A stretch of DNA of 64,000 bases from Octopus bimaculoides (taxonomy: Eukaryota): the NCBI RefSeq assembly GCF_001194135.2, contig NC_068981.1, positions 16,455,304 to 16,519,303 of the forward strand, given 5' to 3'. Within the stretch, counting starts at the first letter, position 1. Each line of letters starts with the position of its first letter. The position numbers and the translations under genes are program-made. This document shows positions 13-47,542 of this stretch, piece after piece. The notes under the pieces are model-generated. The model did no database searches and had not been told where the DNA came from. It saw nothing but the letters and a program-made list of their open reading frames with translations.

Positions 13-443
13 ATACATACATACATACATACATGATGGCTGCCCCCTCGTTATCGAGTACGGCCATTGCACGAAGCTTAACTTAACGGTGCTGTGATCG
101 AATGTGACTTTTTATCCCAGCCAAAGATCTACAATGTCTTGCATAGAGTTGGCATCCAAAACCTTTACTGGCAATAGCTGGCTGTTGTTGTAATTGGGTT
201 CCATGTACCTTTGCGTGTCGTTTAAGTCCTCCTGCTGAATCACACTCTCTTCCACATGCCCGGCAGACATGATTAGTATGGTGTGTAGCATCATCACCAG
301 CGGCCTGGTAGTCAATCATCGGTCTCGCTTTATGACTACGAAGATGACTCATGAGTCCAGCTTTACTGAGGCACGGTCTAGCACAGACTCTGCATGTCAG
401 TGTCATAGGAAGACCCTTGCCATCTGGAAGTGCAGCAACAATG
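13..443 (-). mobile_element. 5'-truncated RTE-clade (BovB-like) LINE 3' end: ORF C-terminus, 48-nt 3'UTR with stem-loop, (ATGT)n tail
   Basis: Minus-strand frame encodes CRVCARPCLSKAGLMSHLRSH, which matches the RTE C-terminal CxxC-R-x-C-x-S-x-x-GL-x-SH-x-R-x-H finger. Stop TAA is at 83-85. The 3'UTR hairpin has CTCG/CGAG (47-50/55-58) enclosed by TGGC/GCCA (37-40/63-66), followed by a TACA microsatellite tail at 13-34. Confidence 0.75.
83..443 (-). pseudogene. Retrotransposon ORF fragment with three C2H2 zinc fingers (third has C->Y)
   Basis: CRVC..HLRSH, CRAC..HAKVH and CQLY..HIRSQH. The upstream part of ORF 83..643 is only (TATG)n read-through, so there is no genuine start. Confidence 0.7.
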
Positions 444-498
444 CATACATACATACATACATACATACATACATACATACATACATACATACATACAC
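444..498. repeat. (CATA)n microsatellite at the 5' junction of the RTE fragment
   Basis: Direct reading. Confidence 0.95.
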
Positions 499-775
499 AC
501 GCAAACACATAAATAATTGGGGCGCTGAGATATGTAACACACTGCCTAAATACGTATCTTGAGAATTTAAGCTTCTCAAATCTATAAAGGCGAAAGCTGA
601 TTCGAAAACTACAGGTCCAAGTCATCATTGGAACTGTAAACATCTGTAAAACTTTCCAAAAGTTTGTCAGTTAAGTATATATGAGTTTGCCTAGATATGC
701 AACTATATGCATCAGAAGATATGGATAAAACAAAACATACTAATCTGCACGTATACACACATACAAAAACACTAA

Positions 776-6943: not shown

Positions 6944-7264
6944 NNNNNNNNNNNNNNNNNNNNNNNNNNNNNNNNNNNNNNNNNNNNNNNNNNNNNNNNN
7001 NNNNNNNNNNNNNNNNNNNNNNNNNNNNNNNNNNNNNNNNNNNNNNNNNNNNNNNNNNNNNNNNNNNNNNNNNNNNNNNNNNNNNNNNNNNNNNNNNNNN
7101 NNNNNNNNNNNNNNNNNNNNNNNNNNNNNNNNNNNNNNNNNNNNNNNNNNNNNNNATAAGTAGACAAATATTTAAATTATTGAATATATATATATAAAAC
7201 AAATAGATATATTAGTATAACGCTCGGGAATTGAAAAAGTCTTTAACGTTTCGAGCCTACACTC

Positions 7265-7991
7265 TTCCGCAGAAGGGAAAGAAGGTGTGTAGCGTGCGAT
7301 CATCGCATTGGCCATCACAAAGAAAGTTGAGTAGAGAATCTACATCAAATTTTGCCAAAAGCCTGCTCAGCGCCCTACCCAAAGTTTTCAAACAGTTTTC
7401 ATCTTTCTCGATACAATCAAGGAGATCTTGTGCAACTGAAACCCGAGTGTCTTTTTGGTCATCTGAAAGCAGTTTTGGTATAAACGTGAATGACACGCAT
7501 CTCATACCAAAATCTTCAGAGATAATGGACTGAACTGACCTGTAACTAATCTACACAACATCTGATAACTCACGGATGTTCATTTGACGAATTCCCTTCA
7601 TATCTGCGATATTTTTCTCAGTTCTGATGGTTTCGGATCTCCCAGAACATTCGTTAATATCGACATTTTTCGGCCATCTTGGAAGCATCTGACCCATTCG
7701 TACACTTCTGTGCGATTTACACACTCTTCTCCTGAGACTTTCTGTAACCTTGCGTAGGCTTCTGTGCGGGTATCGCTATGACAACTTTCTCTGTGATGGT
7801 CAATGCGACGATCACACGCTACACACCTTCCTTTCAAGCACTGCTGTAAACAGCGGAAGTGAACTAGAACGTTGAATCTTAGTGAGCATACACAACTGAG
7901 TTCAAGGTGAATCGTTGCCAAGTAGCTTCACTCTGTGCTTTAGTTTCGTTACTATGTCAACAGTCCGGATACTTATTGATCAAACCTTGTA
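7265..7991 (-). mobile_element. Mariner-family DNA transposon relic: TIR plus 5' half of transposase, with an inverted duplicate of the 5' region
   Basis: TIR at the right end (reverse complement TACAAGGTTTGATCAATAAGTATCCGGACTG). Peptides EAYARLQKVSGEECVNRTEVYEWVRCFQDGR (HTH) and MRCVSFTFIPKLLSDDQKDTRVSVAQDLL (mariner WVPxxL-type linker). Inverted arms 7281-7329 and 7782-7830 match at 45/49. Confidence 0.8.
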
Positions 7992-8751: not shown

Positions 8752-8991
8752 TTACTCTTTTACTCTTCTACTTGTTTCAGTCATTTGAGTGCGGCCATAC
8801 TGGAGCACCGCCTTTAGTCAAGCAAATCGACCCCAGGACTTATTCTTTGTAAGCCTAGTACTTATTGTATCGGTCTCTTTTGCCGAACCGCTAGGTGACA
8901 GGGACGTAATAACACCAGCATCGGTTGTCAAGCGATGTTGGGGAGACAAACACAGACACACAAACATATACACACACACACATACACGTCG

Positions 8992-9053
<62 letters not shown>

Positions 9054-9216
9054 CGACGTGCTTTTTTCAGTTTCCGTCTACCAAATCCACTCACAAGGCT
9101 TTCGTTGCCCCGAGGCTATAGTAGAAGACGCTTGCCTAAGGTGCTACGCAGTGGGACTGAACCCAGAACCATGTGGTTGGTAAGCAAGCTACTTACCACA
9201 CAGCCACTCCTGCGCC
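8752..9216 (-). mobile_element. SINE family A (tRNA-derived, CORE-like; Octopus OR-type by recognition), full length with internal (TA)n/(CA)n
   Basis: Colinear with copies at 22256, 55207 and 61843; tRNA-like head, CORE-like segment, TAAAAGAG-type tail. Confidence 0.9.
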
Positions 9217-10721
9217 AATTCCTAATAATATTATACTATAAACATATGATGGGATTTTTTTAAAAGAGTGAATGTATTTGAGGATCTACTCGTGTAAAAT
9301 ATTATTCGAAGATGTCCAAAAGGAAAAAAATGGTTGAGAACTACAGCTCTACACAAATATACAGCACCCAAATATTCTGCTATAAGGCAGTCTATCATAA
9401 ATCATCGTTATTAGAACCAAGTTAATCAGTATTCTAGCACGTGAGAAAAAACTCAGTGGTGATGTCTCAACATATGCGCGGAAAATATATCAAAACTCTT
9501 GTTTCCGGAAACAAGACGAAACATTCAAAAACTTCTTTCACTGAACAATTTTTAATGAAGCATTGTTAAACAGGCATATCCGGTCCTCATTAGAACCGAG
9601 ACAGCATATTACTGGAATGCTACGTGAGAAAACAAAGCAACCTCACCAGAGAATAGAAATAAAAATTTGATTGTAAATAAATAATTAAATAAATAAATAT
9701 AAATTTAAACACAAATGTTCTAACAACCAAAATTACACACAAATACGTACCTGCGTTTATTGATTGTTTAGTCGACCACGTATGAACATATTAAATAAAC
9801 ACATTAAATGCCTACAAGAGACATTGTCACATACACCTGACTTTTGATAATCAAACAGCCAGTGAATAATAACGAAAATAATAACAATAACAATAGCAAT
9901 GATAACAACAACAATAATATAAGTAAAATGTAATACAGAATTATATGACCAAGAGAAAGATTTTAATCAAATAAATGGAAATTTTATTGGCATACCCACC
10001 ACTTTTATTTTATTGGAACTTATTTGTTTATTTACATTGATCGCTTACGTACGTATATATATATATTTTCTAATTTATACGACTGCCACCTCACGTGTAG
10101 GCGTTTAATAAACACTTCATTGAACAAGAGATTCGAAATTTTGAGAAAAATATAAAACCAAGCGGAATAGCAGTAGATTGAACAGGAAACTTCGGGAAAA
10201 AGCAGACTTCACACGTACAAGTGGTTAAACTTGAATTTAATAAAATTAATGGAGTAGAGGAGAATTATTGTGCTTTGTTTATAAAAACGAAAAATAAAAT
10301 CAAGAGCCATCATATAAATTGAGATTTCTGGGCGAATATGTCCTTTGACATCATTCTTCTCTTGGGAGACATGAAAATCAAAAAGAGAGAGGGGTGGGGG
10401 TTTACTATTTCAGAAGCTAACATGCTATCATCGCCACAAGCTGATGAAAGCAACACTCTCAAGTCATAAACGTATCGAGAGCCTTTTGAGGAGATGGAAA
10501 GACTATACTATGCACACAGCATTAAAGAGACTCATTCACAGGTTTTGAAATTTACCGCAGTGAAGTTCTACCGCAGTAAGGCGTTAGAATATGCATACAC
10601 ACACGCACCCATGCGTGGACACACGTGCGCACGCGTACGCACATATATATACCTGCATAAATCTCATTCTTACTGCCAACCTCCAACCTCTTTCTTTCTT
10701 TCTTTCTTTCTATATCTCTCC

Positions 10722-10789
<68 letters not shown>

Positions 10790-11274
10790 NNNNNNNNNNN
10801 NNNNNNNNNNNNNNNNNNNNNNNNNNNNNNNNNNNNNNNNNNNNNNNNNNNNNNNNNNNNNNNNNNNNNNNNNNNNNNNNNNNNNNNNNNNNNNNNNNNN
10901 NNNNNNNNNNNNNNNNNNNNNNNNNNNNNNNNNNNNNNNNNNNNNNNNNNNNNNNNNNNNNNNNNNNNNNNNNNNNNNNNNNNNNNNNNNNNNNNNNNNN
11001 NNNNNNNNNNNNNNNNNNNNNNNNNNNNNNNNNNNNNNNNNNNNNNNNNNNNNNNNNNNNNNNNNNNNNNNNNNNNNNNNNNNNNNNNNNNNNNNNNNNN
11101 NNNNNNNNNNNNNNNNNNNNNNNNNNNNNNNNNNNNNNNNNNNNNNNNNNNNNNNNNNNNNNNNNNNNNNNNNNNNNNNNNNNNNNNNNNNNNNNNNNNN
11201 NNNNNNNNNNNNNNNNNNNNNNNNNNNNNNNNNNNNNNNNNNNNNNNNNNNNNNNNNNNNNNNNNNTATATATA

Positions 11275-11439
11275 TGACGAGCTTCTTTCAGTTTCCGTCA
11301 ACCAGATCGACTCACGAGGTTTTGGTCGGACTCAAGATATATAGCAGAAGACACTTGCCCAAGATACTGCGCAGTGGGAGTGAACCCGGAACCATGTGGA
11401 TGGTAAGCAAGCTACTTACCACAGAGCTACTCCTGCGCC
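11275..11439 (-). mobile_element. SINE family A, head half (rest in gap or absent)
   Basis: Colinear with 9053-9216. Confidence 0.85.
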
Positions 11440-11942
11440 TATGTGTATGCATGTATGTGTATATATATATATGAGTACATGTGTGTGTGTGCGTGCGTGC
11501 GTGCGTGCGTGCGCGTGTATGTAAGTATGTCAATATATGTGTACGCGCGTGTAGATGCATGTATACATATGCATCTGCACGCATCTAGGTCTATATTCGT
11601 AACCTCGATTGTGATTTTGTTGCTTGTGCACATGCATATGAAAGAGAGAGAGAGAGGAGGCGAGGAGTGAGAGAAGAAGAGAATGGAGAGAAGGTATAAA
11701 GAGGAAGAAAGAGAGAGAAATGAAAAGCGAAGGTAGCGCCATATCAAAATGGCGACAGGCCACCAGCTATAGAACCAGTAAAAGAAGTTTATTTGTGGAA
11801 TATTATTGTCCAATTATTTTCATCGCCTACTTTTGAATATTGTTGATTATTTTATAGGATGGAGAGTGTTATCGGTAGTAGAGATATGTCAATAGAAATG
11901 AATGCTTGCAGTAATTATTTTTAATGAGAGTGTAAAATGGAC

Positions 11943-13095: not shown

Positions 13096-13110
13096 TGATA
13101 AGACATGCGA

Positions 13111-26972: not shown

Positions 26973-28760
26973 AGTGCATAAAATATATGTTTCTGTATTA
27001 CTAAAAGGACGAGAGTTAAATTGCTTCCCGCCTTCAAGTAAATTTGCAGAGTTAACTGGCTTCTCATCTACACAGTAGTTTTACAGGGAATTCCTTGTAA
27101 TTTTACCCAGTGTCTGTGTCACTTAGTTGGATAGATGTACGTAGAACAAAACCGACTCGAAGGAACAATATTTAAACCCTGTAATCATAAATCACGAATC
27201 AAGTTTAACTGGTTTATTCCTTAATTACAGAGACATTTCGTTCCTCAAATTCAAAGCTGAATGTAAGGAAATCTTGTATTCATCGTGCATTTCATAAACA
27301 TATTATCACTATAAAGGATATGATAGCACTTGGATAGAGAAGAGACACTGAACGATTAAGTTACTGTATGGTCTTGGCTTAAGCAGTGCCGGTTGTAAAA
27401 TATTGCTTAGGGTCATTTTGTCCATCTTAATCATAAGCAGTAAATCTCTGATAAAGTAATTAAATGTTAATATAATTTCAATAACTCCACTATATTACCA
27501 TTATCATTATATTATATTGTTATGAATACAAATAGTATTAATTTCCAAATTTGAAACAATGCCACATACTTTGAGGCAGCGATTACGATTAGCTTCACTT
27601 CCAAGTCTTAAGTTAGCATTTATATTATCGAGAGATGAAGGATAAAATGAATGGCGACTCTCACACGATTTCAACTCAGTGTTGTAAAATAACTGAGACT
27701 TACTTTCCTTTGCCACATTCCTACGCTATGGTTTGTAAATAATGCTGACTGTGTCTGATACGAGATCTCCTTACAATTGTGCCTGTACTTTGTGTAAAAT
27801 CTCTCTCAACACTTGTGGGAAAATATTTGTAATCAAAATGGTCAGGTGTATTTTATGCTGTCTGTTTTACATTCAGTTAATTCTAATATTTTCTCAAATA
27901 TTAATTGAATCCCACAGATCTTCGGTATGTCAATGACTTAGATGTTGGAATTGCATTATTTGCTCACAACATTTACAGCATTCGAGAGCCAGCGATGGAG
28001 ATTCCATGTGAACGCTCAACTGTTTTATATATATCAGCCATTCACGTTCAACTAACAGCCTCCTGTTTTAAAAACAGAAGTTTACGTTGAATAATGTGAC
28101 TGTGGATGTACATTTCCGATAAAAAAAGAAGGTATGTTCATTGGTTTCGAAGCTTTTCCTCAATGAACAGCGGCAGCAACAATTCACTCCTACACTCATA
28201 TGGTCATCCATAAAATAAATCTTATTTACGACGTTTTGGAGTTGATATTTCCAAGTGCAGATACAAGCTCATTCGAGATACGCACAGATATAATATTGTG
28301 AGAACTGCATTCTTTTCTAGATCAGGAAATACGCTAATTTTCATTAACTTTCGAACATCTCAGAAGCAAAAGCACAACACATTTTAAAGGGCGGCTCACA
28401 TTACGGGGTTAGTAAGACATTGCGGGTGTTAAAACAAACACGATCATACTAGATCATACAGATAAACAAAATGCCATCTATTTGGCTAAGATTTACTCTC
28501 TAATACAATAAAACCCCATAATCACATGTATGCTGCCCCTCACTCTTTCTCTTTCTCTCTCTCTCTTTTTCTTTCTCTCTTTCACTCCCTCCCCCTACTT
28601 TCTCTCTCCGACAGCTAATACTTATCGTTGCCAAAGTTTTTCATGAAGCGTCCAACTCCAGCTGCATTTTGGATGCACTTCCACTCATTTATATGCAAAG
28701 CGTACGCCTCTTGCACACACAAGTATGCATACACACATATATACACACACAAACACACAC

Positions 28761-36765: not shown

Positions 36766-37118
36766 CTGTTCTATATTTAAGAGATGAAGAATTATGTGCG
36801 TTATTCACATTATTTACACTACTTACATTCGACGGATATTTGTCCTCATATGGCGTACTGGGTAAGAGCGCGGGCTACTAACCCCAAGATTCCGAGTTCG
36901 ATTCCAAGCAGTTACCTGAACAATAATATTAATAATAATAATAATTATTATAATAATAACATCGAAAAAGTACCTTAGGAATGAGAACCCAGGTTCGAAC
37001 TTTCCCCAAGGCACCTGAAGAAGGCTGGAAGGTATATGAGCCGAAACGTTGTGTTAACAATAAACAAAATGAAGGCAAATATCCGTCAAATGTAAATAGT
37101 GTAAATAACGTAAATAAC
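36766..37118 (+). mobile_element. Family C tRNA-headed, hammerhead-bearing element preceded by an inverted copy of its own 3' tail
   Basis: Head CATATGGCGTACTGG..GAGTTCGATTCC (36847-36905), (AAT)n linker, ribozyme at 37010-37055. Segment 36766-36849 is the reverse complement of the family tail. Confidence 0.85.
37010..37055 (+). ncRNA. Minimal type I hammerhead ribozyme (variant copy)
   Basis: GGCAC-CTGAAGA-A-GGCT..AGCC-GAAACGT-T-GTGTT. Confidence 0.7.
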
Positions 37119-39441: not shown

Positions 39442-39650
39442 AAGGTAGCGAGCTGGCAGAAACGTTAGCACGCCGGTCGAAATGCCTAACGGTATTTCGT
39501 TTCTTTCTGAGTTCAAACTCCGCTGAGGTCGACTTTTCCTTTTATCATTTCGAAGTCGTTAAATTAAGTACCAGTTGCGTACTGGGTCGATGTAATCGAT
39601 TGGACCCCTCCCCCAAAATTTCGGGTCTTCTGCCCAGAGTAGAAAAGAAT
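39442..39650 (+). mobile_element. SINE family B, near full length
   Basis: Head AGCGAGCTGGCAGAAACGTTAGCACGCC, B-box-like GAGTTCAAACTCC, TAAATTAAGTACCAGTT body, AGAAAAGAAT tail. Confidence 0.85.
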
Positions 39651-39689
39651 CTTTTCTTTGGTACTAGTACTATCTTTACTACTAGTGGT

Positions 39690-40440
39690 TTTTATATTTT
39701 GCATCTCACCTACGTACAAAATATATCATTCTATGACTATTATTACTTTTTTATCTTTATGTATTTTTATTGTTTACTTTACAAATATTTGTAAAAACAT
39801 TTATTCACTTTTAGCTTTATTTATATTAAAATCTGGTATATTTATTTTTATCTCCATCTCTTTATTTAAAATAAAGGTCTTGCAATTTTTTTCTGTACAT
39901 ATATACCTTTATAATTTTTTTATATATTTTTATACTATTTTTTAATATTATTTTATATCTCTTTATTTATAATGAAGATTTTATTATAATTTTTCTATAT
40001 AATTTTATATTTCTTCATATTAATTTTATAATTTTTATATTTTTCTATATTATTCTCATATTGCTATATTCTTTTATTTTTCATTTTTATAGTTTTTATA
40101 CCTTTATATATTTTATATTCTTTACAATTTTTTATATATTCTTTTATGATTTTTTTATATATCCTTTATAAATTTCTTTAAAGATTATATATATATTTAC
40201 AGTTTATACTTTATATAACTTGTACATTTTATGTTTATATCCTTATATTTTAAATACATTATATTCCTTCTTAAATTATGAGCCTAAATTCTAAATGTTT
40301 ATATCGAATACAATGCTTTATATAATTCTAAATATTTTTTTTCTTCCCATTCTTCTAAATATTTTAAATATAATTAATTTGTCACCTATATATCTAATTT
40401 CTAAATTTATTTTAATATTATAACATTATAACTATGCTAA
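39690..40440. repeat. Very AT-rich, T-skewed low-complexity tract (TTTTATA-like units)
   Basis: Direct reading. Confidence 0.8.
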
Positions 40441-42997: not shown

Positions 42998-45506
42998 TCC
43001 TACTATTCTTAGATTATTATCACCATTTCGTCGTCATCTCTATTTGTTGTTCATGCCTGTGACAAAGGTGGAATAATTTGAATCATCGTGAAAATATTTT
43101 TATTGAAAGTCATCATGAATGGCAGTCAAGGAATGCCGCTTGTGCATGATTCTCAATCACGATTGAACTTACTTTCCTTTCCTTTCCTTTCCTTTCATCT
43201 CCTCCCCTTTATTGCTTTCTCTACCTCTCTCTCTCTCTCTTTCTCTTTATTTTCTGTCTTCTTTCCACCCTCTTCTCTCCCTTTCAAATATGACAGAAAT
43301 CTATGTGTTGAGTTGACACCTCCTAGATTGTTAGTCTTTAATTCATTTCATCTCCAACCAAAGTACATCCCTTTAATCTTATCCACTGCAGCAATAGTTG
43401 AAGGAATTCTCAAAATAAACACGATATTAAGATATTTTTATGGCATAATCGTTGCCAAATATAATATTCTTCTGACCTCTGAGCTTCGTGGAAGCGAAGA
43501 AATTAAGTTCAGATCACAGACGTGGTCTGAAAACATGCAACAGAATGAACTCCACTAAAATCAGCAAAAGCTTCATTAGTGATGTTAAAGAGGGCAACAC
43601 GTTTAGTATACTGTCTAAAAGCAGGTACGGCTCATTCAGTGTGCTACCGTAAAGTTTCTGTATATTTACTTTAACTCATAAGATTTAATCTCCTCAAGGC
43701 TATGGGAGAGGACAGTTAACGAACTCTTTCCGAAGTTGTTACGCGATGAGATAAAACCCAGAAGCAAGTGCTTGGGAAACAATCGTTTTAAATACTTCTC
43801 AAGTTCATGAATACAATTTCCGACTCAGATTGTAGGTTACAACTGAAGAGCTCCTTTCTCTAAGAGAATTAAAGTATTCTAGTTGTGGATAAGACTTATT
43901 TTATGAATATAAAGATTACTGAACCCCTTTTAATTTAGGTATCTTGACAATAGATATATAGTAATGAGAGTCACGAGATACAATCTGTCCGCAATTATAT
44001 ATTTATTCGACCAACGGCGATTTTCATAATCAATATCCAACTTATATTTGCATCTCTACACGGAGGAGTGCATATCTCTTAATACCTTTATACATGGGTG
44101 CATAGTGATGAGCTCGGAGAAAGAAGAAGCATTGTTTTGGAGGTGATCTACTTAGTGCATGTAATATGGTGTTTAATGCAAAGCAGGCAGTGAATGTGGA
44201 AGATTTTTGCAAGTGAATACGGCTTACAAAGCCATTAGGATTAAAAGTGACGGAAAGAAAGATTGTATATAATCAGTAGTTTTCATTTTCGCAAGAAACG
44301 TAAGGAATCACACACTATGAATTTCACTGTTCAAGTTTTCACTCTGGCAATCATAAGCTATTCCTATGAAGCGTCCTTCAGACTGTCATCGTTGTCGTCG
44401 TCGTCGTCGTTGTTGTTTAGCTCTAAATAGATTCATGATCCTATGCACATTCTACTTAAAACCAGTCACTCCTTTCATTCACCCAAGAAACAAGCAAACA
44501 GATATCTTTGTAGACATGTCCCTTCACAATCGCCATGTATTTCAGTCTTCACAGCCACGATTCTTCAGGAAGTTCACTCAATACTTCACTGCATTAGTTC
44601 TGGCAAAAATATTCTACAACGCTTGGAGAAATCACAACCCTACAAACTAAACGGTTTTTAACCCTCAGTGTAACTCTTACGAGATAATTATCCGAACCGC
44701 AAAACATGCTACTGTACACCGCGCAGCCTCCAAGCGCTCCTGTCCCTCAGTTTGCATATCTAAGACATTAGCTTATGCCCTCTTCTTCTCAAAGTATTAA
44801 AGTCTATATTAGCTTCTATTTCTAGTTCATTAACCAACTACGTTAAGGCGCCCGCCTTAGTTTTCTTTTTAGATGGTAAAACTGCATTGTAGAAAGTGAA
44901 ATGTTAAAGAATTATCGATATGGAGAAATATCTGACACTGGTGTTACCGAGAATAATTCCAAACAGTCTTAGCGAATGAACAAATATTTACCAAATTGAT
45001 TGTATGATAGCTTTGATAGGTGTTTCCATAAACTTGGTAGGTGTTACCTTCTGGTGTAAAAAATGCGTAGCGTAATTCTATAAACAAACACAGCCTTGCA
45101 GATAAGATTTCTTTTCGATCGTATGAATCCTTCCACACAAACGAATTAGTATAAAGTATCAAATACTAATTTCGTTATTTGATATCTAATACAGTTAAGT
45201 CTATAACACATCATGGAATCCATCGCAGTAGAGAAGTATAATTATCTGGTGAGTTTAACGTGGGAAGAATTGTTATATACGTCACCAACACGTACATCCG
45301 ATAATTTGATCCTTCGTAATTAAACGGTCGCAGACACTGACACCAATCCGAGTAGTGGATGACTCTCTACTCCTTCGTCGATTTAATAATCGGAAGACGT
45401 GAAAGTACAGGTCAATTTAATGAAACCTATAGTCACGATATTATATCCATTACATTATTTACATTATTTACATTTGACGGATATTTGTCCTCATTTTTTT
45501 GTTGTT

Positions 45507-45552
45507 AACACAACGTTTCGGCTGATATACCCTCCAGCCTTCGTCAGGTGTC
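45507..45552 (-). ncRNA. Minimal type I hammerhead ribozyme
   Basis: Exact reverse complement of 46294-46339. Confidence 0.75.
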
Positions 45553-46293
45553 TTGGGGAAATTTCGAACCTGGGTTCTCATTCCTAACGATGTTACTATT
45601 ATTATTATATTATTATTATTATTACTATTATTAATCAGGTCGCTGCCGTGAATCGAACTCGGAACATTGGGGTTAGTAGCCCGCGCTCTTAACCACTACG
45701 CCATATGGTTTTACCCGAAGGAGATATTTGCGAAGTGTTGTATTGCTCTTGAATACTGCCCTGATGTCATATGGGCCGNNNNNNNNNNNNNNNNNNNNNN
45801 NNNNNNNNNNNNNNNNNNNNNNNNNNNNNNNNNNNNNNNNNNNNNNNNNNNNNNNNNNNNNNNNNNNNNNNNNNNNNNNNNNNNNNNNNNNNNNNNNNNN
45901 NNNNNNNNNNNNNNNNNNNNNNNNNNNNNNNNNNNNNNNNNNNNNNNNNNNNNNNNNNNNNNNNNNNNNNNNNNNNNNNNNNNNNNNNNNNNNNNNNNNN
46001 NNNNNNNNNNNNNNNNNNNNNNNNNNNNNNNNNNNNNNNNNNNNNNNNNNNNNNNNNNNNNNNNNNNNNNNNNNNNNNNNNNNNNNNNNNNNNNNNNNNN
46101 NNNNNNNNNNNNNNNNNNNNNNNNNNNNNNNNNNNNNNNNNNNNNNNNNNNNNNNNNNNNNNNNNNNNNNNNNNNNNNNNNNNNNNNNNNNNNNNNNNNN
46201 NNNNNNNNNNNNNNNNNNNNNNNNNNNNNNNNNNNNNNNNNTAATAGTAGTAACATCGTTAGGAATGAGAACCCAGGTTCGAAATTTCCTCAA

Positions 46294-46339
46294 GACACCT
46301 GACGAAGGCTGGAGGGTATATCAGCCGAAACGTTGTGTT
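46294..46339 (+). ncRNA. Minimal type I hammerhead ribozyme
   Basis: Stem I GACAC (46294-98) / GTGTT (46335-39); CTGACGA (46299-305); extra A; stem II GGCTG (46307-11) / CAGCC (46322-26); GAAA; palindromic ACGT; predicted cleavage after T46334 (GUU). Confidence 0.75.
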
Positions 46340-47542
46340 AACAACAAAAAAGATGAGGACAAATATCCGTCAAATGTAAATAATGTAAATAATTCCTCAT
46401 CTCTTAAATATAGAACTGTATTATATCCATTGCTTATATTTACAGTTTGGTACACTGCCTCATCGAATGTTAAATGTATTTTGCTTTTAATAAGATGTTC
46501 AGCTGCTGAAAATTACCACCAGGGTTCTTTTTGCATACAGTCAAAAGCAAAGGCGCACACGTTTGATTCTTGATTAACATTTCTCTTTTGTAGTCTTGTT
46601 GCTTGTGACGTAAAGAACTTCCCTTTTATTTTCGTCTTACGTGATATGCATTTCACAACAGCCGCATTAATACCACTACCTGGCTAATGAAAGCTTTTAG
46701 CGGGGTTTTATCAGGATTTCATTTGGATTGATGCACACTTTACACTTTTCTACATGCTAAGCACTATAATTATATTCGCTAGATCATTTCTTCTCTTTTC
46801 GATCATCCAATCTGAAATTCTCTCCTGACACCGGTTTTTACAGCTTCCGACTTCTTTCACTTCAAAATGAATGTTAACATCACTAATCTCACCGGATTTA
46901 TGTTCCCGTGTTTTAATCTGTTCGATGTCCGTAACATTCTCAACATTTTTCTTGTTTTGTTTTTTTTCTTCTAACAGAACAGCGTTAAGTGGAATGCATC
47001 CATGAACGTGGATATGAAGGCTGCAAACGTTGCTTCTAGCCATCATATTACATATTACCACGTAAAAACATGCCATTTTTGTTAAAAAGCAGCTAACGTT
47101 TATACGATAATTAGAATATCATGGATACCACCAAAGTCACAGAATACAAGAAATTTAAGAATTAAGGGCATTATTCTTACTAAAACATTTAATACTAAAT
47201 TCCATCAAGAACAGAGAAGTGCTCGACGCTAATTGGTTAACATAATACTATCAATGTGCGCATGTCATTTATCTGATCTTCATATAAATGTACATATCAA
47301 TGCTAGGCTTAATCTTTATTTTCTCATGATAAAGTCTTACGAAGCCAATATAATGAAATATAAGATAAAAATGTAAACCATTCTCTTCTTATTTTGCGCT
47401 TGTTTCCATTCCGTTATTTCTAAATTCCACTGGAATGGCCTTCTAAAACAAATTTAACTCATTCTTTACAATGTTTGATGTAAATTATGCTACTCATACA
47501 TACATACAAACAGACTTTCTCTTTCTCTCTCTCTCTCTTTCC

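What the first reader, a model, noticed from the sequence alone, without database searches (positions are those of the whole stretch)
46242..46418. tRNA-headed SINE-like family (C) carrying a minimal, Penelope-type hammerhead ribozyme
Seen: the family has a tRNA-like Pol III head (TGGCGTAGTGG A box, GAGTTCGATTC B box), an (AAT)n linker, then GACAC-CTGACGA-A-GGCTG-(10 nt)-CAGCC-GAA-ACGT-T-GTGTT. This gives a 5-bp stem I, an intact core, a 5-bp stem II and a self-complementary ACGT stem III. It occurs three times (46294-46339 +, 45507-45552 -, 37010-37055 +). The diverged 37 kb copy changes the free core position N7 (C->A) and turns an A-U of stem I into G-U, both structure-compatible. It also has one stem II mismatch. 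Established: minimal type I hammerheads with palindromic stem III that cleave as dimers are characteristic of Penelope-like elements; an extra nucleotide between A9 and G10.1 is tolerated (CChMVd hammerhead); Schistosoma Sm-alpha is a precedent for a tRNA-promoter SINE with a hammerhead. Inference: this is a Pol III-transcribed, self-cleaving non-autonomous retroelement (a SINE/retrozyme hybrid) mobilised by a PLE. I do not know of it being described in cephalopods.
Basis: partly seen in the sequence, partly recalled or inferred. Interest (0 to 1): 0.9.

Follow-up and report, generated by a model that had tools for sequence, protein, structure and literature searches.

The report
Octopus SINE carrying Penelope-type hammerhead motif
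A short mobile element in an octopus-like genome joins a tRNA-like promoter head to a minimal hammerhead ribozyme motif and a conserved hairpin, and it inserts in the odd inverted and tandem style of Penelope-like retrotransposons, so it is probably their long-missing SINE-type passenger.

Summary
A 46-nt minimal type I hammerhead (HHR) motif occurs three times (46294-46339 +, 45507-45552 -, 37010-37055 +). Shuffled windows gave no match to a strict descriptor in 300 trials. The focal copy has lost its head in an assembly gap; the tRNA-like head is seen in the other two copies.

The motif meets every sequence hallmark published for Penelope-like-element (PLE) minimal hammerheads. Rfam does not detect it.

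The same HHR-plus-hairpin 3' module turned up in more than 3,000 predicted ORFs, in Octopus bimaculoides and in three further SINE-like families of an unidentified animal genome. There it also forms 114-129-nt tandem arrays. The HHR helices and the tail hairpin keep pairing across the four families, with some double changes.

Insertions carry 10-13-bp target duplications. They often form head-to-head inverted pairs or partial tandems, which is the PLE insertion style. The "(GTAAATAAY)n tail" is really the hairpin loop.

Not shown: self-cleavage, Pol III transcription, and the partner PLE; no PLE ORF was found. Dead copies show no extra conservation of the core. Best reading: a tRNA-headed SINE superfamily that parasitises PLEs.

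The parts
46242..46418 (+). Focal SINE copy (c46). Its 5' part (head and most of the (AAT)n linker) is lost in the assembly gap. It holds the end of the linker, the body, the HHR, and the full 'long' 3' end.
   Evidence: 98% identical to the minus-strand copy
46294..46339 (+). Minimal type I hammerhead motif. Helix I is GACAC/GUGUU. The core is CUGACGA, followed by an extra A. Helix II is GGCUG(G)/(U)CAGCC, then GAA. Helix III is the palindrome ACGU with no loop. U17 follows; predicted cleavage lies between 46334 and 46335.
   Evidence: own covariance model R1 scores 76.3 bits; hallmarks as in PMC4209133
46351..46402 (+). Conserved tail hairpin. The 5' arm AGATGAGGA is at 46351-46359 and the 3' arm TCCTCATCT is at 46394-46402. 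The 34-nt loop holds (GTAAATAAT)x2 at 46376-46393.
   Evidence: the same 8-9-bp stem occurs in four SINE families, with one compensatory change in family ref2
46403..46418 (+). 3' terminal segment CTTAAATATAGAACTG. Together with the 3' arm it forms the 'long' end, a stretch of about 25-31 nt that is present in 7 of 13 copies.
46419..46431 (+). Right copy of the 13-bp target-site duplication TATTATATCCATT.
45439..45451 (+). Left copy of the same 13-bp target-site duplication. The two repeats bracket the whole unit: c45(-), gap, c46(+).
45452..45707 (-). Full-length inverted partner copy (c45). Head 45635-45707 (A box 45693-45703, B box 45650-45660); (AAT)n linker 45596-45634; body 45553-45595; HHR 45507-45552; 'short' tail 45452-45506, which ends in the 9-mer repeats.
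45779..46241 (.). Assembly gap (463 N) at the centre of the head-to-head pair. CATATGGG at 45767-45774 may be the start of c46's head; this is unverified.
36847..37118 (+). Older full-length copy (c37), 86% identical, with the short 3' end. Its HHR at 37010-37055 still satisfies the descriptor.
36766..36849 (-). Inverted, 5'-truncated copy (hairpin and long 3' end only) that abuts the 5' end of c37.

Best explanation
The feature is one copy of a roughly 280-bp composite SINE of an octopus genome.

Build, 5' to 3':
- a degenerate tRNA-derived head with A and B boxes;
- an (AAT)n linker;
- a 45-nt body;
- a 46-nt minimal type I hammerhead of the kind carried by Penelope-like elements (PLEs);
- an A-rich spacer;
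- an 8-9-bp hairpin (AGAUGAGG/CCUCAUCU) whose loop holds (GTAAATAAY)n;
- about 15 terminal bases.

Proposed mechanism:
1. Inferred: RNA polymerase III starts at the head and reads through. The sense strand has no T4 run.
2. Shown to be conserved; its function is inferred: the HHR-plus-hairpin 3' module is the part recognised or processed by the partner's reverse transcriptase. It is shared by at least four SINE-like families in at least two animal genomes, while heads, loops and bodies differ.
3. The architecture is shown; the enzyme is inferred: integration is by a PLE-type enzyme (RT plus GIY-YIG endonuclease). It leaves 10-13-bp target duplications, head-to-head inverted pairs with one long and one short 3' end, 5'-truncated copies and partial tandems.
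4. Inferred from published work on PLE hammerheads: the hammerhead has no helix III of its own. It could cleave after U17 only when two copies pair through the ACGU palindrome. That can happen in the 114-129-nt tandem arrays of the related families, which are retrozyme-like. It can hardly happen in the single or inverted octopus copies. There the motif is probably kept mainly as part of the recognition module.
For: Motif:
- It has an intact core and all four PLE-specific hallmarks listed by Cervera and de la Pena 2014: an extra nucleotide between 9 and 10.1, the G10.1-C11.1 pair, palindromic 15.2-16.2 with no loop 3, and a 4-5-bp helix I.

Family size and host:
- More than 150 representative ORFs (the listing is capped at 150) and 3,178 proteins match the HHR-plus-tail translation. 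One is UniRef A0A0L8FV75 of Octopus bimaculoides.

Related families with the same module:
- Three related families share the module: ref2 (L044, L048, L049), fam3 (L044) and fam4 (L055). ref2 and fam3 also have tRNA-like heads.

Structure conservation across 25 HHRs of the four families:
- 78% of cells are paired, against at most 43% when partners are slid.
- Five pairs show double changes.
- 17 double-changed cells are seen, against 9.2 +/- 2.4 in shuffles (0 of 500 shuffles reach the observed value).
- The third pair of helix I runs C-G / U.G / U-A at non-CpG sites.
- The tail hairpin is kept in all four families, with a G-C -> A-U change in ref2.

PLE-style insertions:
- A 13-bp TSD brackets c45(-)/c46(+), and a 10-bp TSD brackets the head-to-head pair at 63.1-63.5 kb.
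- An inverted 5'-truncated copy abuts c37. The same arrangement occurs in L045 and L052, so 4 of 9 independent octopus loci show it.
- An inverted copy plus partial tandems occurs in L044, L048, L049 and L055.
- These match the published PLE descriptions.

Context:
- PLEs are active in octopus.
- There is no T4 run in the sense strand of c45, c37 or L050, at 62-68% A+T.
Against: - No PLE ORF (RT plus GIY-YIG) was found in the window or in about 85 kb of related loci. The one RT seen is LINE-like. The 3' module was therefore never matched to a real PLE 3' end.
- Rfam hammerhead models do not recognise the motif.
- Among 11 octopus copies the core is no better conserved than the flanks. Older copies have lost G5, G12 or the palindrome.
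- Both helix II double changes are CpG-decay products, so they are weak as covariation.
- Predicted folds favour alternatives. The core pairs with ACGU in the monomer, and the 3' strand of helix I is captured by a GUUGU/ACAAC hairpin in context.
- Cleavage at U17 would cut the tail off the head, yet all copies contain the sequence on both sides of the site. The template RNA was therefore uncleaved.
- Inverted pairs could also arise by LINE twin priming.
Confidence: 0.55

Rival explanations
1. It is an ordinary LINE-dependent tRNA SINE. The conserved tail hairpin is the recognition stem-loop of a 'stringent' LINE (CR1, L2 or RTE type). The inverted pairs come from twin priming. The hammerhead-like stretch is an old captured fragment that plays no part in mobilisation.
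For: - A stem-loop followed by a short 3' terminus is the classic stringent LINE/SINE tail; this rests on established knowledge (Ohshima and Okada).
- The number of 9-mer repeats varies from 2 to 4.
- The c37 unit has the topology of twin priming on one RNA.
- LINE RTs lie near related copies, and LINEs are the most abundant TE order in octopus.
- No PLE ORF was found.
Against: - The 9-mers lie in the hairpin loop, not at the 3' terminus.
- The c45/c46 unit and the 63-kb unit each contain more than one element's worth of sequence inside a single TSD, which one-RNA twin priming cannot give.
- Partial tandems of the 3' module with a 5'-truncated leading unit are a PLE trait, not a LINE trait.
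- The HHR is kept with every PLE-specific hallmark in four families whose neighbouring sequence has diverged.
Confidence: 0.25
2. It is not one element. A short PLE-derived or retrozyme-derived fragment (HHR plus tail) inserted repeatedly and independently into the (AAT)n tails of a simple tRNA SINE, because its endonuclease prefers microsatellites.
For: - Head-plus-(AAT)n elements exist on their own at 63.1-63.5 kb.
- PLE endonucleases favour microsatellites.
- 5'-truncated HHR-plus-tail copies occur without heads.
Against: - c45, c37 and L050 share head, linker, body and tail. Linker length is nearly the same (about 42 nt), the junction is the same, and divergence is similar along the whole length.
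- The related ref2 and fam3 families have head and module joined without any (AAT)n.
Confidence: 0.07
3. The hammerhead resemblance is fortuitous or purely vestigial. The RNA never cleaves, and the sequence is conserved only as a protein-binding structure, or not at all.
For: - There is no Rfam hit.
- Dead copies show no excess conservation of the core.
- Minimal PLE hammerheads cleave poorly in vitro (PMC4209133).
- Alternative folds are predicted.
- Naiad PLEs thrive without a hammerhead.
Against: - A chance match is excluded: 0 of 300 shuffled windows match, and my analytic estimate is below one chance match per genome.
- Eleven core bases, the inserted A and ACGU are all retained in the consensus of four families.
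- Related minimal hammerheads were reported to cleave as dimers (Lunse et al. 2017, as cited; I could not read the paper itself).
Confidence: 0.3

Closest known systems
Minimal type I hammerheads of Penelope-like elements (Cervera and de la Pena 2014; Lunse, Weinberg and Breaker 2017)
   Same: The core is the same. There is one extra nucleotide between A9 and G10.1 and a G10.1-C11.1 pair. Helix III is reduced to the palindromic A15.1-C-G-U16.1 with no loop, and helix I is 4-5 bp. Such motifs are dispersed by the thousand as single copies in animal genomes, and they are expected to act only as dimers.
   Different: Here the motif sits in a defined roughly 280-bp element headed by a tRNA-like Pol III promoter and followed by a conserved hairpin. 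It is not in a pLTR flanking an RT/EN ORF, and it is not an anonymous 'truncated PLE'. Helix II is 5-6 bp rather than 7-8.
Schistosoma Sm-alpha / Sj-alpha SINE-like elements
   Same: They combine a tRNA-type Pol III promoter with a hammerhead in one short non-autonomous retroelement, and they occur in repeats.
   Different: Sm-alpha carries a canonical hammerhead, with loop-loop tertiary contacts and a real (if weak) helix III, and it cleaves efficiently. Its order of parts and its sequence are unrelated. No conserved tail hairpin or PLE-style inverted insertions have been described for it.
Metazoan non-LTR retrozymes (Cervera and de la Pena 2020; Li, Clavereau and Pollet 2026 preprint)
   Same: They are non-coding, carry a type I hammerhead, form tandem units, and are proposed to be mobilised by PLEs. 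The 2026 preprint shows homology between Xenopus retrozymes and PLE pLTRs. The related families ref2 and fam4 form 129-nt and 114-nt tandem arrays.
   Different: Retrozymes have 170-400-nt units, canonical hammerheads and no Pol III head. The octopus family is not tandem. Circular RNAs are not shown here.
Octopus tRNA-derived SINEs OK, OR1 and OR2 (Ohshima and Okada 1994) and SINE superfamilies with a shared core (CORE, V, Deu, Ceph, Meta)
   Same: It is a tRNA-derived head joined to a module shared between families and species.
   Different: The shared module here lies at the 3' end and contains a ribozyme motif plus a hairpin. I could not obtain the OK, OR1 or OR2 sequences, so identity with one of them is not excluded.

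Membership tests
Hammerhead ribozyme, PLE-type minimal variant | Catalytic core C3U4G5A6N7G8A9 ... G12A13A14 ... A15.1/U16.1, with H17 not G | tested here: met
   It is intact in c46, c45 and c37 and in the consensus of four families.
Hammerhead ribozyme, PLE-type minimal variant | One unpaired nucleotide between A9 and G10.1, and a G10.1-C11.1 pair | tested here: met
   The inserted A is invariant in 25 of 25 aligned copies. G-C occurs in 17 of 23 distinct rows. The feature is defined in PMC4209133.
Hammerhead ribozyme, PLE-type minimal variant | Helix III reduced to palindromic 15.1-16.1 and 15.2-16.2 with no loop | tested here: met
   ACGU: the A/U pair is present in 23 of 23 distinct rows and the C/G pair in 19 of 23.
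Hammerhead ribozyme, PLE-type minimal variant | Short helix I (4-5 bp) and long helix II (7-8 bp) | tested here: inconclusive
   Helix I is 5 bp in octopus and 3-4 bp in the relatives. Helix II is 5-6 bp, or 7 bp in fam3, so it is shorter than the published consensus.
Hammerhead ribozyme, PLE-type minimal variant | Location in the pseudo-LTRs of an element that encodes RT plus GIY-YIG EN | tested here: not met
   No such ORF was found in the window or the related loci. This fits the published statement that most such motifs are solitary.
Hammerhead ribozyme, PLE-type minimal variant | Site-specific self-cleavage as a dimer | not testable with these tools
   This needs in vitro transcription of monomer and tandem constructs.
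Rfam hammerhead families (RF00163, RF00008, RF02275-7) | Score at or above the gathering threshold | tested here: not met
   There is no hit even at E<=10 on 71 nt. This is expected, because the models require helix III.
tRNA-derived SINE (SINE2) | Head homologous to tRNA with internal A and B boxes | tested here: inconclusive
   The boxes TGGCGTAGTGG and GAGTTCGATTC are present. Rfam tRNA gives 12.8 bits against a gathering score of 29, covering positions 8-63. ARAGORN is negative.
tRNA-derived SINE (SINE2) | Dispersed copies of 100-600 bp flanked by target-site duplications | tested here: met
   At least 9 independent loci were found. The TSDs of 13 and 10 bp bracket inverted pairs rather than single copies.
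tRNA-derived SINE (SINE2) | Pol III transcription and a 3' end shared with an autonomous partner | not testable with these tools
   The only indirect evidence is the absence of an internal T4 run. No partner sequence was available.
PLE-type insertion architecture | An inverted 5'-truncated copy abutting the 5' end | tested here: met
   Seen at 36766-36849(-) next to c37, as c45(-)/c46(+) within one TSD, and in L045, L052, L044 and L048. The feature is defined in PMC8557442.
PLE-type insertion architecture | Partial tandems (pseudo-LTR) with a 5'-truncated unit | tested here: inconclusive
   This is absent in the octopus copies but present in ref2, fam3 and fam4.
PLE-type insertion architecture | A 30-40-bp 'tail' extension at only one end of the unit | tested here: inconclusive
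   A long 3' end of about 25-31 nt is present on one arm only in three of four inverted pairs. Whether it is equivalent to the PLE 'tail' is an inference.
Metazoan non-LTR retrozyme | Tandem repeats of 170-400 nt, each with a type I HHR, expressed as circular RNA | tested here: not met
   There are no tandem copies in the window or in the octopus loci. The relatives have 114-129-nt units. Circular RNA was not testable.

The most novel reading that the evidence does not exclude
A previously unrecognised SINE superfamily exists in cephalopods and at least one other animal lineage. It is defined not by a central core but by a 3' module made of a PLE-type minimal hammerhead plus a conserved hairpin, and it is driven by tRNA-like Pol III heads. 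It would be the PLE counterpart of the LINE-SINE partnership. It would also explain much of the 'thousands of solitary minimal hammerheads' in animal genomes, and it would link SINEs and retrozymes: single Pol III units on one side and self-cleaving tandem arrays on the other, as two states of one parasite.
Probability: 0.4. Interest if true: 0.75.

Novelty: new variant of a known kind. Interest (0 to 1): 0.65.

Why it matters
PLEs are the least understood major class of retrotransposons, and the role of their hammerheads is unknown. Their non-autonomous passengers have only just been proposed: retrozymes, in vertebrates, in a 2026 preprint.

A small, abundant, Pol III-headed passenger keeps only the hammerhead and one hairpin from the presumed partner. 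That marks out the minimal RNA that a PLE reverse transcriptase may need, so it can be tested directly with a marked 280-nt RNA instead of a 3-kb element.

It would also re-label part of the SINE load of octopus genomes, where SINEs are about 11% of the O. vulgaris genome. And it gives a concrete source for the solitary minimal hammerheads that standard Rfam scans miss.

Tried and rejected
- Rfam scans (gathering and E<=10, on the window, on slices and on L044) found no hammerhead and only a sub-threshold tRNA.
- ARAGORN found nothing.
- Scans of IMG/VR and JGI metagenome contigs with the HHR pattern gave 42 loci. All were phage or bacterial hammerheads or termite-gut contigs, and none belonged to this family. 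The termite contig L031 gave no PLE domain.
- A word-indexed protein search with the HHR-frame peptide found only one ORF. A mariner-fragment query, meant to fetch long octopus contigs, found only two metagenome hits. The exhaustive representative search opened the family.
- P0005, the O. bimaculoides protein, has no contig on record.
- The window has no RT or PLE ORF. The RT in L049 is LINE-like.
- No TSD was found for the inv36.8 plus c37 unit.
- The 71-nt spacer next to c45's head is unique.
- The idea that (GTAAATAAY)n is a terminal CR1-like microsatellite was rejected. It lies in the hairpin loop, and the element continues beyond it in 7 of 13 copies.
- The W/Q and R/R 'covariation' in the peptides, and the helix II double changes, were traced to CpG decay and down-weighted.
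- The double-hammerhead dimer cannot be scored with nearest-neighbour tools because its topology is pseudoknot-like. RNAcofold gave an unrelated extended duplex.
- Supplements of the two key papers are not held, and Lunse et al. 2017 is not held.
- My recollection that the '...IIWF...' ORF remnants are GIY-YIG-like got no Pfam support.
Full report
**1. What is in the window**

The window is a draft eukaryotic sequence, 34% G+C, with 14 N gaps and many microsatellites.

The motif GACAC-CTGACGA-A-GGCTG-N10-CAGCC-GAA-ACGT-T-GTGTT is present at 46294-46339 (+) and 45507-45552 (-). A variant is present at 37010-37055 (+).

BLAST of the full element against the window shows:
- a full-length copy on the minus strand (c45, 45452-45707);
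- a full-length 86%-identical copy (c37, 36847-37118);
- the focal copy (c46, 46242-46418), whose head lies in the 463-N gap 45779-46241;
- an inverted tail-only fragment (36766-36849, -) that abuts the 5' end of c37;
- two head-plus-(AAT)n elements head to head at 63.1-63.5 kb.

**2. Is the motif more than chance?**

An explicit minimal-hammerhead descriptor was run on the window and on shuffles. It required:
- the core;
- 0-1 inserted base;
- helix II of at least 4 bp closed by G-C;
- GAA;
- A15.1, a palindrome, U16.1;
- H17;
- helix I of at least 4 bp.

It finds only these three sites. It finds none in 300 shuffled windows, and a relaxed version finds 0.0067 per window. A rough analytic estimate is about 1e-11 per position, which is below one chance match per octopus-sized genome.

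Rfam finds no hammerhead at any threshold. That is expected, because the motif has no helix III hairpin.

**3. What kind of hammerhead is it?**

Cervera and de la Pena (PMC4209133) defined the minimal hammerheads of metazoan Penelope-like elements by these features:
- helix I of 4-5 bp;
- a conserved G10.1-C11.1 pair;
- palindromic 15.2-16.2 with no loop 3;
- action as dimers, with low activity in vitro.

They also note that most copies are solitary. The octopus motif has every sequence feature.

Folding gives no independent support. The 46-mer prefers a fold in which GACG of the core pairs with CGUU (-14.4 against -11.2 kcal/mol for the hammerhead fold). In 100-nt context the 3' strand of helix I is taken by a GUUGU/ACAAC hairpin.

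**4. The element is a unit**

c45 and c37 differ by 13% in the head, 2% in the body (plus a 10-nt indel), 9% in the HHR and 9% in the tail. Their (AAT)n linkers have almost the same length. A third full-length copy (L050) has the same order of parts.

The head gives a sub-threshold tRNA match (12.8 bits, D, anticodon and T arms). No T4 run occurs in the sense strand of three full-length copies.

**5. Relatives elsewhere**

The HHR and tail are open in one reading frame. An exhaustive profile-free search of 1.8 billion representative proteins with that 50-aa translation returned the maximum of 150 hits. A profile of 40 of them found 3,178 proteins. They fall into two groups.

*Octopus-type ORFs.* There are about 26 representatives. 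They include a UniProt entry of Octopus bimaculoides (83% identity) and contigs of sequencing runs SRR11869385-94. So the window is very probably octopus. Their DNA (L001, L045-47, L050-54) raised the sample to 13 copies.

*A much larger family, 'ref2'.* It occurs in long contigs of ENA assembly ERZ21867824 and in NCBI GCA_052426985.1. The organism was not identifiable with these tools. The same genome holds two more families, fam3 and fam4.

The module CUGAAGA-A-helix II-GAA-ACGU-H-helix I, followed by an A-rich spacer and the hairpin AGAUGAGG/CCUCAUCU, occurs in all three. Full-length ref2 and fam3 copies also carry a tRNA-like head. No head was seen for fam4, whose one sampled array begins with a 5'-truncated unit. 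The heads, bodies and loops are otherwise unrelated to the octopus ones.

ref2 and fam4 form tandem arrays of 129-nt and 114-nt units. Twenty-two of 121 ref2 representatives contain 2-3 units.

**6. The 3' end, re-read**

The 25-31 nt that follow the 9-mer repeats in c46 and in the inverted fragment are not flank. They form the 3' arm of a conserved hairpin plus a short terminus (...TATAGAAC). They are present in 7 of 13 octopus copies and in the O. bimaculoides ORF. The (GTAAATAAY)n repeats are therefore in the hairpin loop. The other six copies stop right after the second 9-mer (the 'short' end).

**7. How it inserts**

- A 13-bp direct repeat, TATTATATCCATT, lies just outside c45's short end (45439-45451) and just after c46's long end (46419-46431). 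The head-to-head pair, with its gap, is therefore one insertion.
- A 10-bp repeat, CCAAGTTGTT, likewise brackets the head-to-head pair at 63.1-63.5 kb.
- c37 has an inverted 5'-truncated partner with the long end. L052 and L045 show the same arrangement. That makes 4 of 9 independent octopus loci.
- In the other genome, full-length copies are preceded by 5'-truncated HHR-plus-tail units and by inverted truncated copies.

This is the published description of PLE insertions: 5' truncation, partial tandems that form pseudo-LTRs, an inverted 5'-truncated copy at the 5' end, a 30-40-bp tail at one end, and trouble for short-read assemblies (PMC8557442 section 6; PMC8969392). One-RNA twin priming by a LINE could explain c37. 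It cannot explain units that hold more than one full element inside one TSD.

**8. Is the structure under selection?**

Among the 11 octopus HHR copies the core (0.864 identity to consensus) is no better kept than helix II (0.871), loop 2 (0.841), the body (0.831) or the tail (0.856). Older copies have lost G5, G12 or the palindrome. This is what dead retroposon copies should show, so it neither supports nor refutes function in the master copies.

Between families the picture differs. I aligned 25 HHRs from the four families; the counts are:
- 78% of cells pair, against at most 43% when partners are slid;
- five pairs show changes on both sides;
- there are 17 double-changed cells against 9.2 +/- 2.4 in shuffles (0 of 500 shuffles reach this);
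- the covariation score is 0.181 against 0.141 (2 of 500).

There are two caveats. These are few evolutionary events. And the two helix II double changes (C-G to U-A, G-C to A-U) are complementary decay products of two CpGs, which preserve pairing in 3 of 4 combinations by chance.

The third pair of helix I (C-G, U.G, U-A) and the hairpin's G-C to A-U change in ref2 are not at CpGs.

A covariance model built from the alignment finds only the three known sites in the window, at 76, 76 and 66 bits.

**9. Mechanism**

The best reading is that a Pol III transcript carries a 3' module borrowed from a PLE and is copied into the genome by PLE RT/EN.

Because every copy contains the sequence on both sides of the predicted cleavage site, the template was uncleaved RNA. 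The hammerhead therefore cannot be an obligatory processing step for the single-unit octopus element. It may matter in tandem arrays, where two adjacent motifs can pair through ACGU and release unit-length RNA as retrozymes do (PMC7229834). Or it may simply be part of what the RT recognises.

None of this is shown. No PLE ORF or PLE 3' end could be retrieved for comparison.

**10. Novelty**

The following are known:
- solitary minimal hammerheads in animal genomes;
- Sm-alpha SINE-like elements with canonical hammerheads;
- metazoan retrozymes;
- since July 2026, homology between Xenopus retrozymes and PLE pLTRs;
- octopus tRNA SINEs (OK, OR1, OR2), known since 1994.

I found no paper that links octopus or any cephalopod SINE to a hammerhead, or that describes tRNA-headed SINEs with a PLE-type 3' module.

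Repbase and Dfam could not be consulted. The family may be catalogued there without the ribozyme having been noticed.

Noticed in passing
window 63110-63524: Two head-plus-(AAT)n elements lie head to head: the minus copy has about 260 nt of (AAT)n and a 12-nt head deletion, and the plus copy has (AAT)4. They have no HHR module. A 10-bp target duplication, CCAAGTTGTT (63110-63119 and 63515-63524), brackets them. So the bare head also moves, and it too inserts as inverted dimers. Its (TAA)n tail could point to a different partner, for example a Dong/R4-like one.
   Followed up: partly
window 45708-45778: A unique 71-nt stretch lies between c45's head and the gap, inside the TSD-bracketed unit. 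It ends in CATATGGG just before the Ns, which may be the start of c46's head. L052 has a 15-nt spacer (ATAATTACCGAAGGG) at the equivalent junction. That spacer resembles the reverse complement of CCTTCGGGTAA seen here.
   Followed up: partly
L002-L005, L016, L021, L027, L029, L039 (IMG/VR and marine metagenome contigs): Marine viral-contig hammerheads have helix II plus loop GGCTGGAGGGATACCAGCC, almost the same as the octopus GGCTGGAGGGTATATCAGCC. They have a normal helix III. Much of the match is forced by the search pattern. The loop similarity (GAGGG.ATA) is not forced.
   Followed up: no
window 7260-7927 (-): A mariner/Mos1-type transposase remnant in two frames (HTH_48, E=2.7e-4).
   Followed up: partly
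window 86-670 (-): A 195-aa ORF with three C2H2-like zinc-finger motifs; the Pfam hits are sub-threshold. It may be the N-terminus of a restriction-like-endonuclease LINE (R2 or R4/Dong type), or a ZNF gene fragment that runs off the window.
   Followed up: partly
window 8789-9263 (+), 10494-11474 (+), 61880-62250 (-): These are copies of another repeat family, whose ORFs share '...PASVVKRCW...FQFPSTKSTHKA...RRRLPKVLRSGTEPRTMW'. A further family is shared by 26767-27080 and 39444-39791 ('ETLARR[SA]KCL[TA]VFR').
   Followed up: no
window 13105-13371 (+); L044 10549-11254 (+): ORF remnants with '...RK[IT]IWF...' occur in both the octopus window and the unidentified genome. In L044 the remnant lies right next to a SINE array. 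From memory they resemble a widespread invertebrate ORF family with a GIY-YIG-like motif, but Pfam gave no support.
   Followed up: partly
L044 1306-3391 and 11660-12257: A 73-nt satellite (28 copies) and a 118-nt tandem repeat (5 copies) occur in the unidentified genome. They are unrelated to the SINE.
   Followed up: no
L044 9855-10010: The tRNA-like head of the minus-strand ref2 copy is itself tandemly duplicated (77 nt x 2). This is an unusual partial tandem at the 5' end.
   Followed up: no
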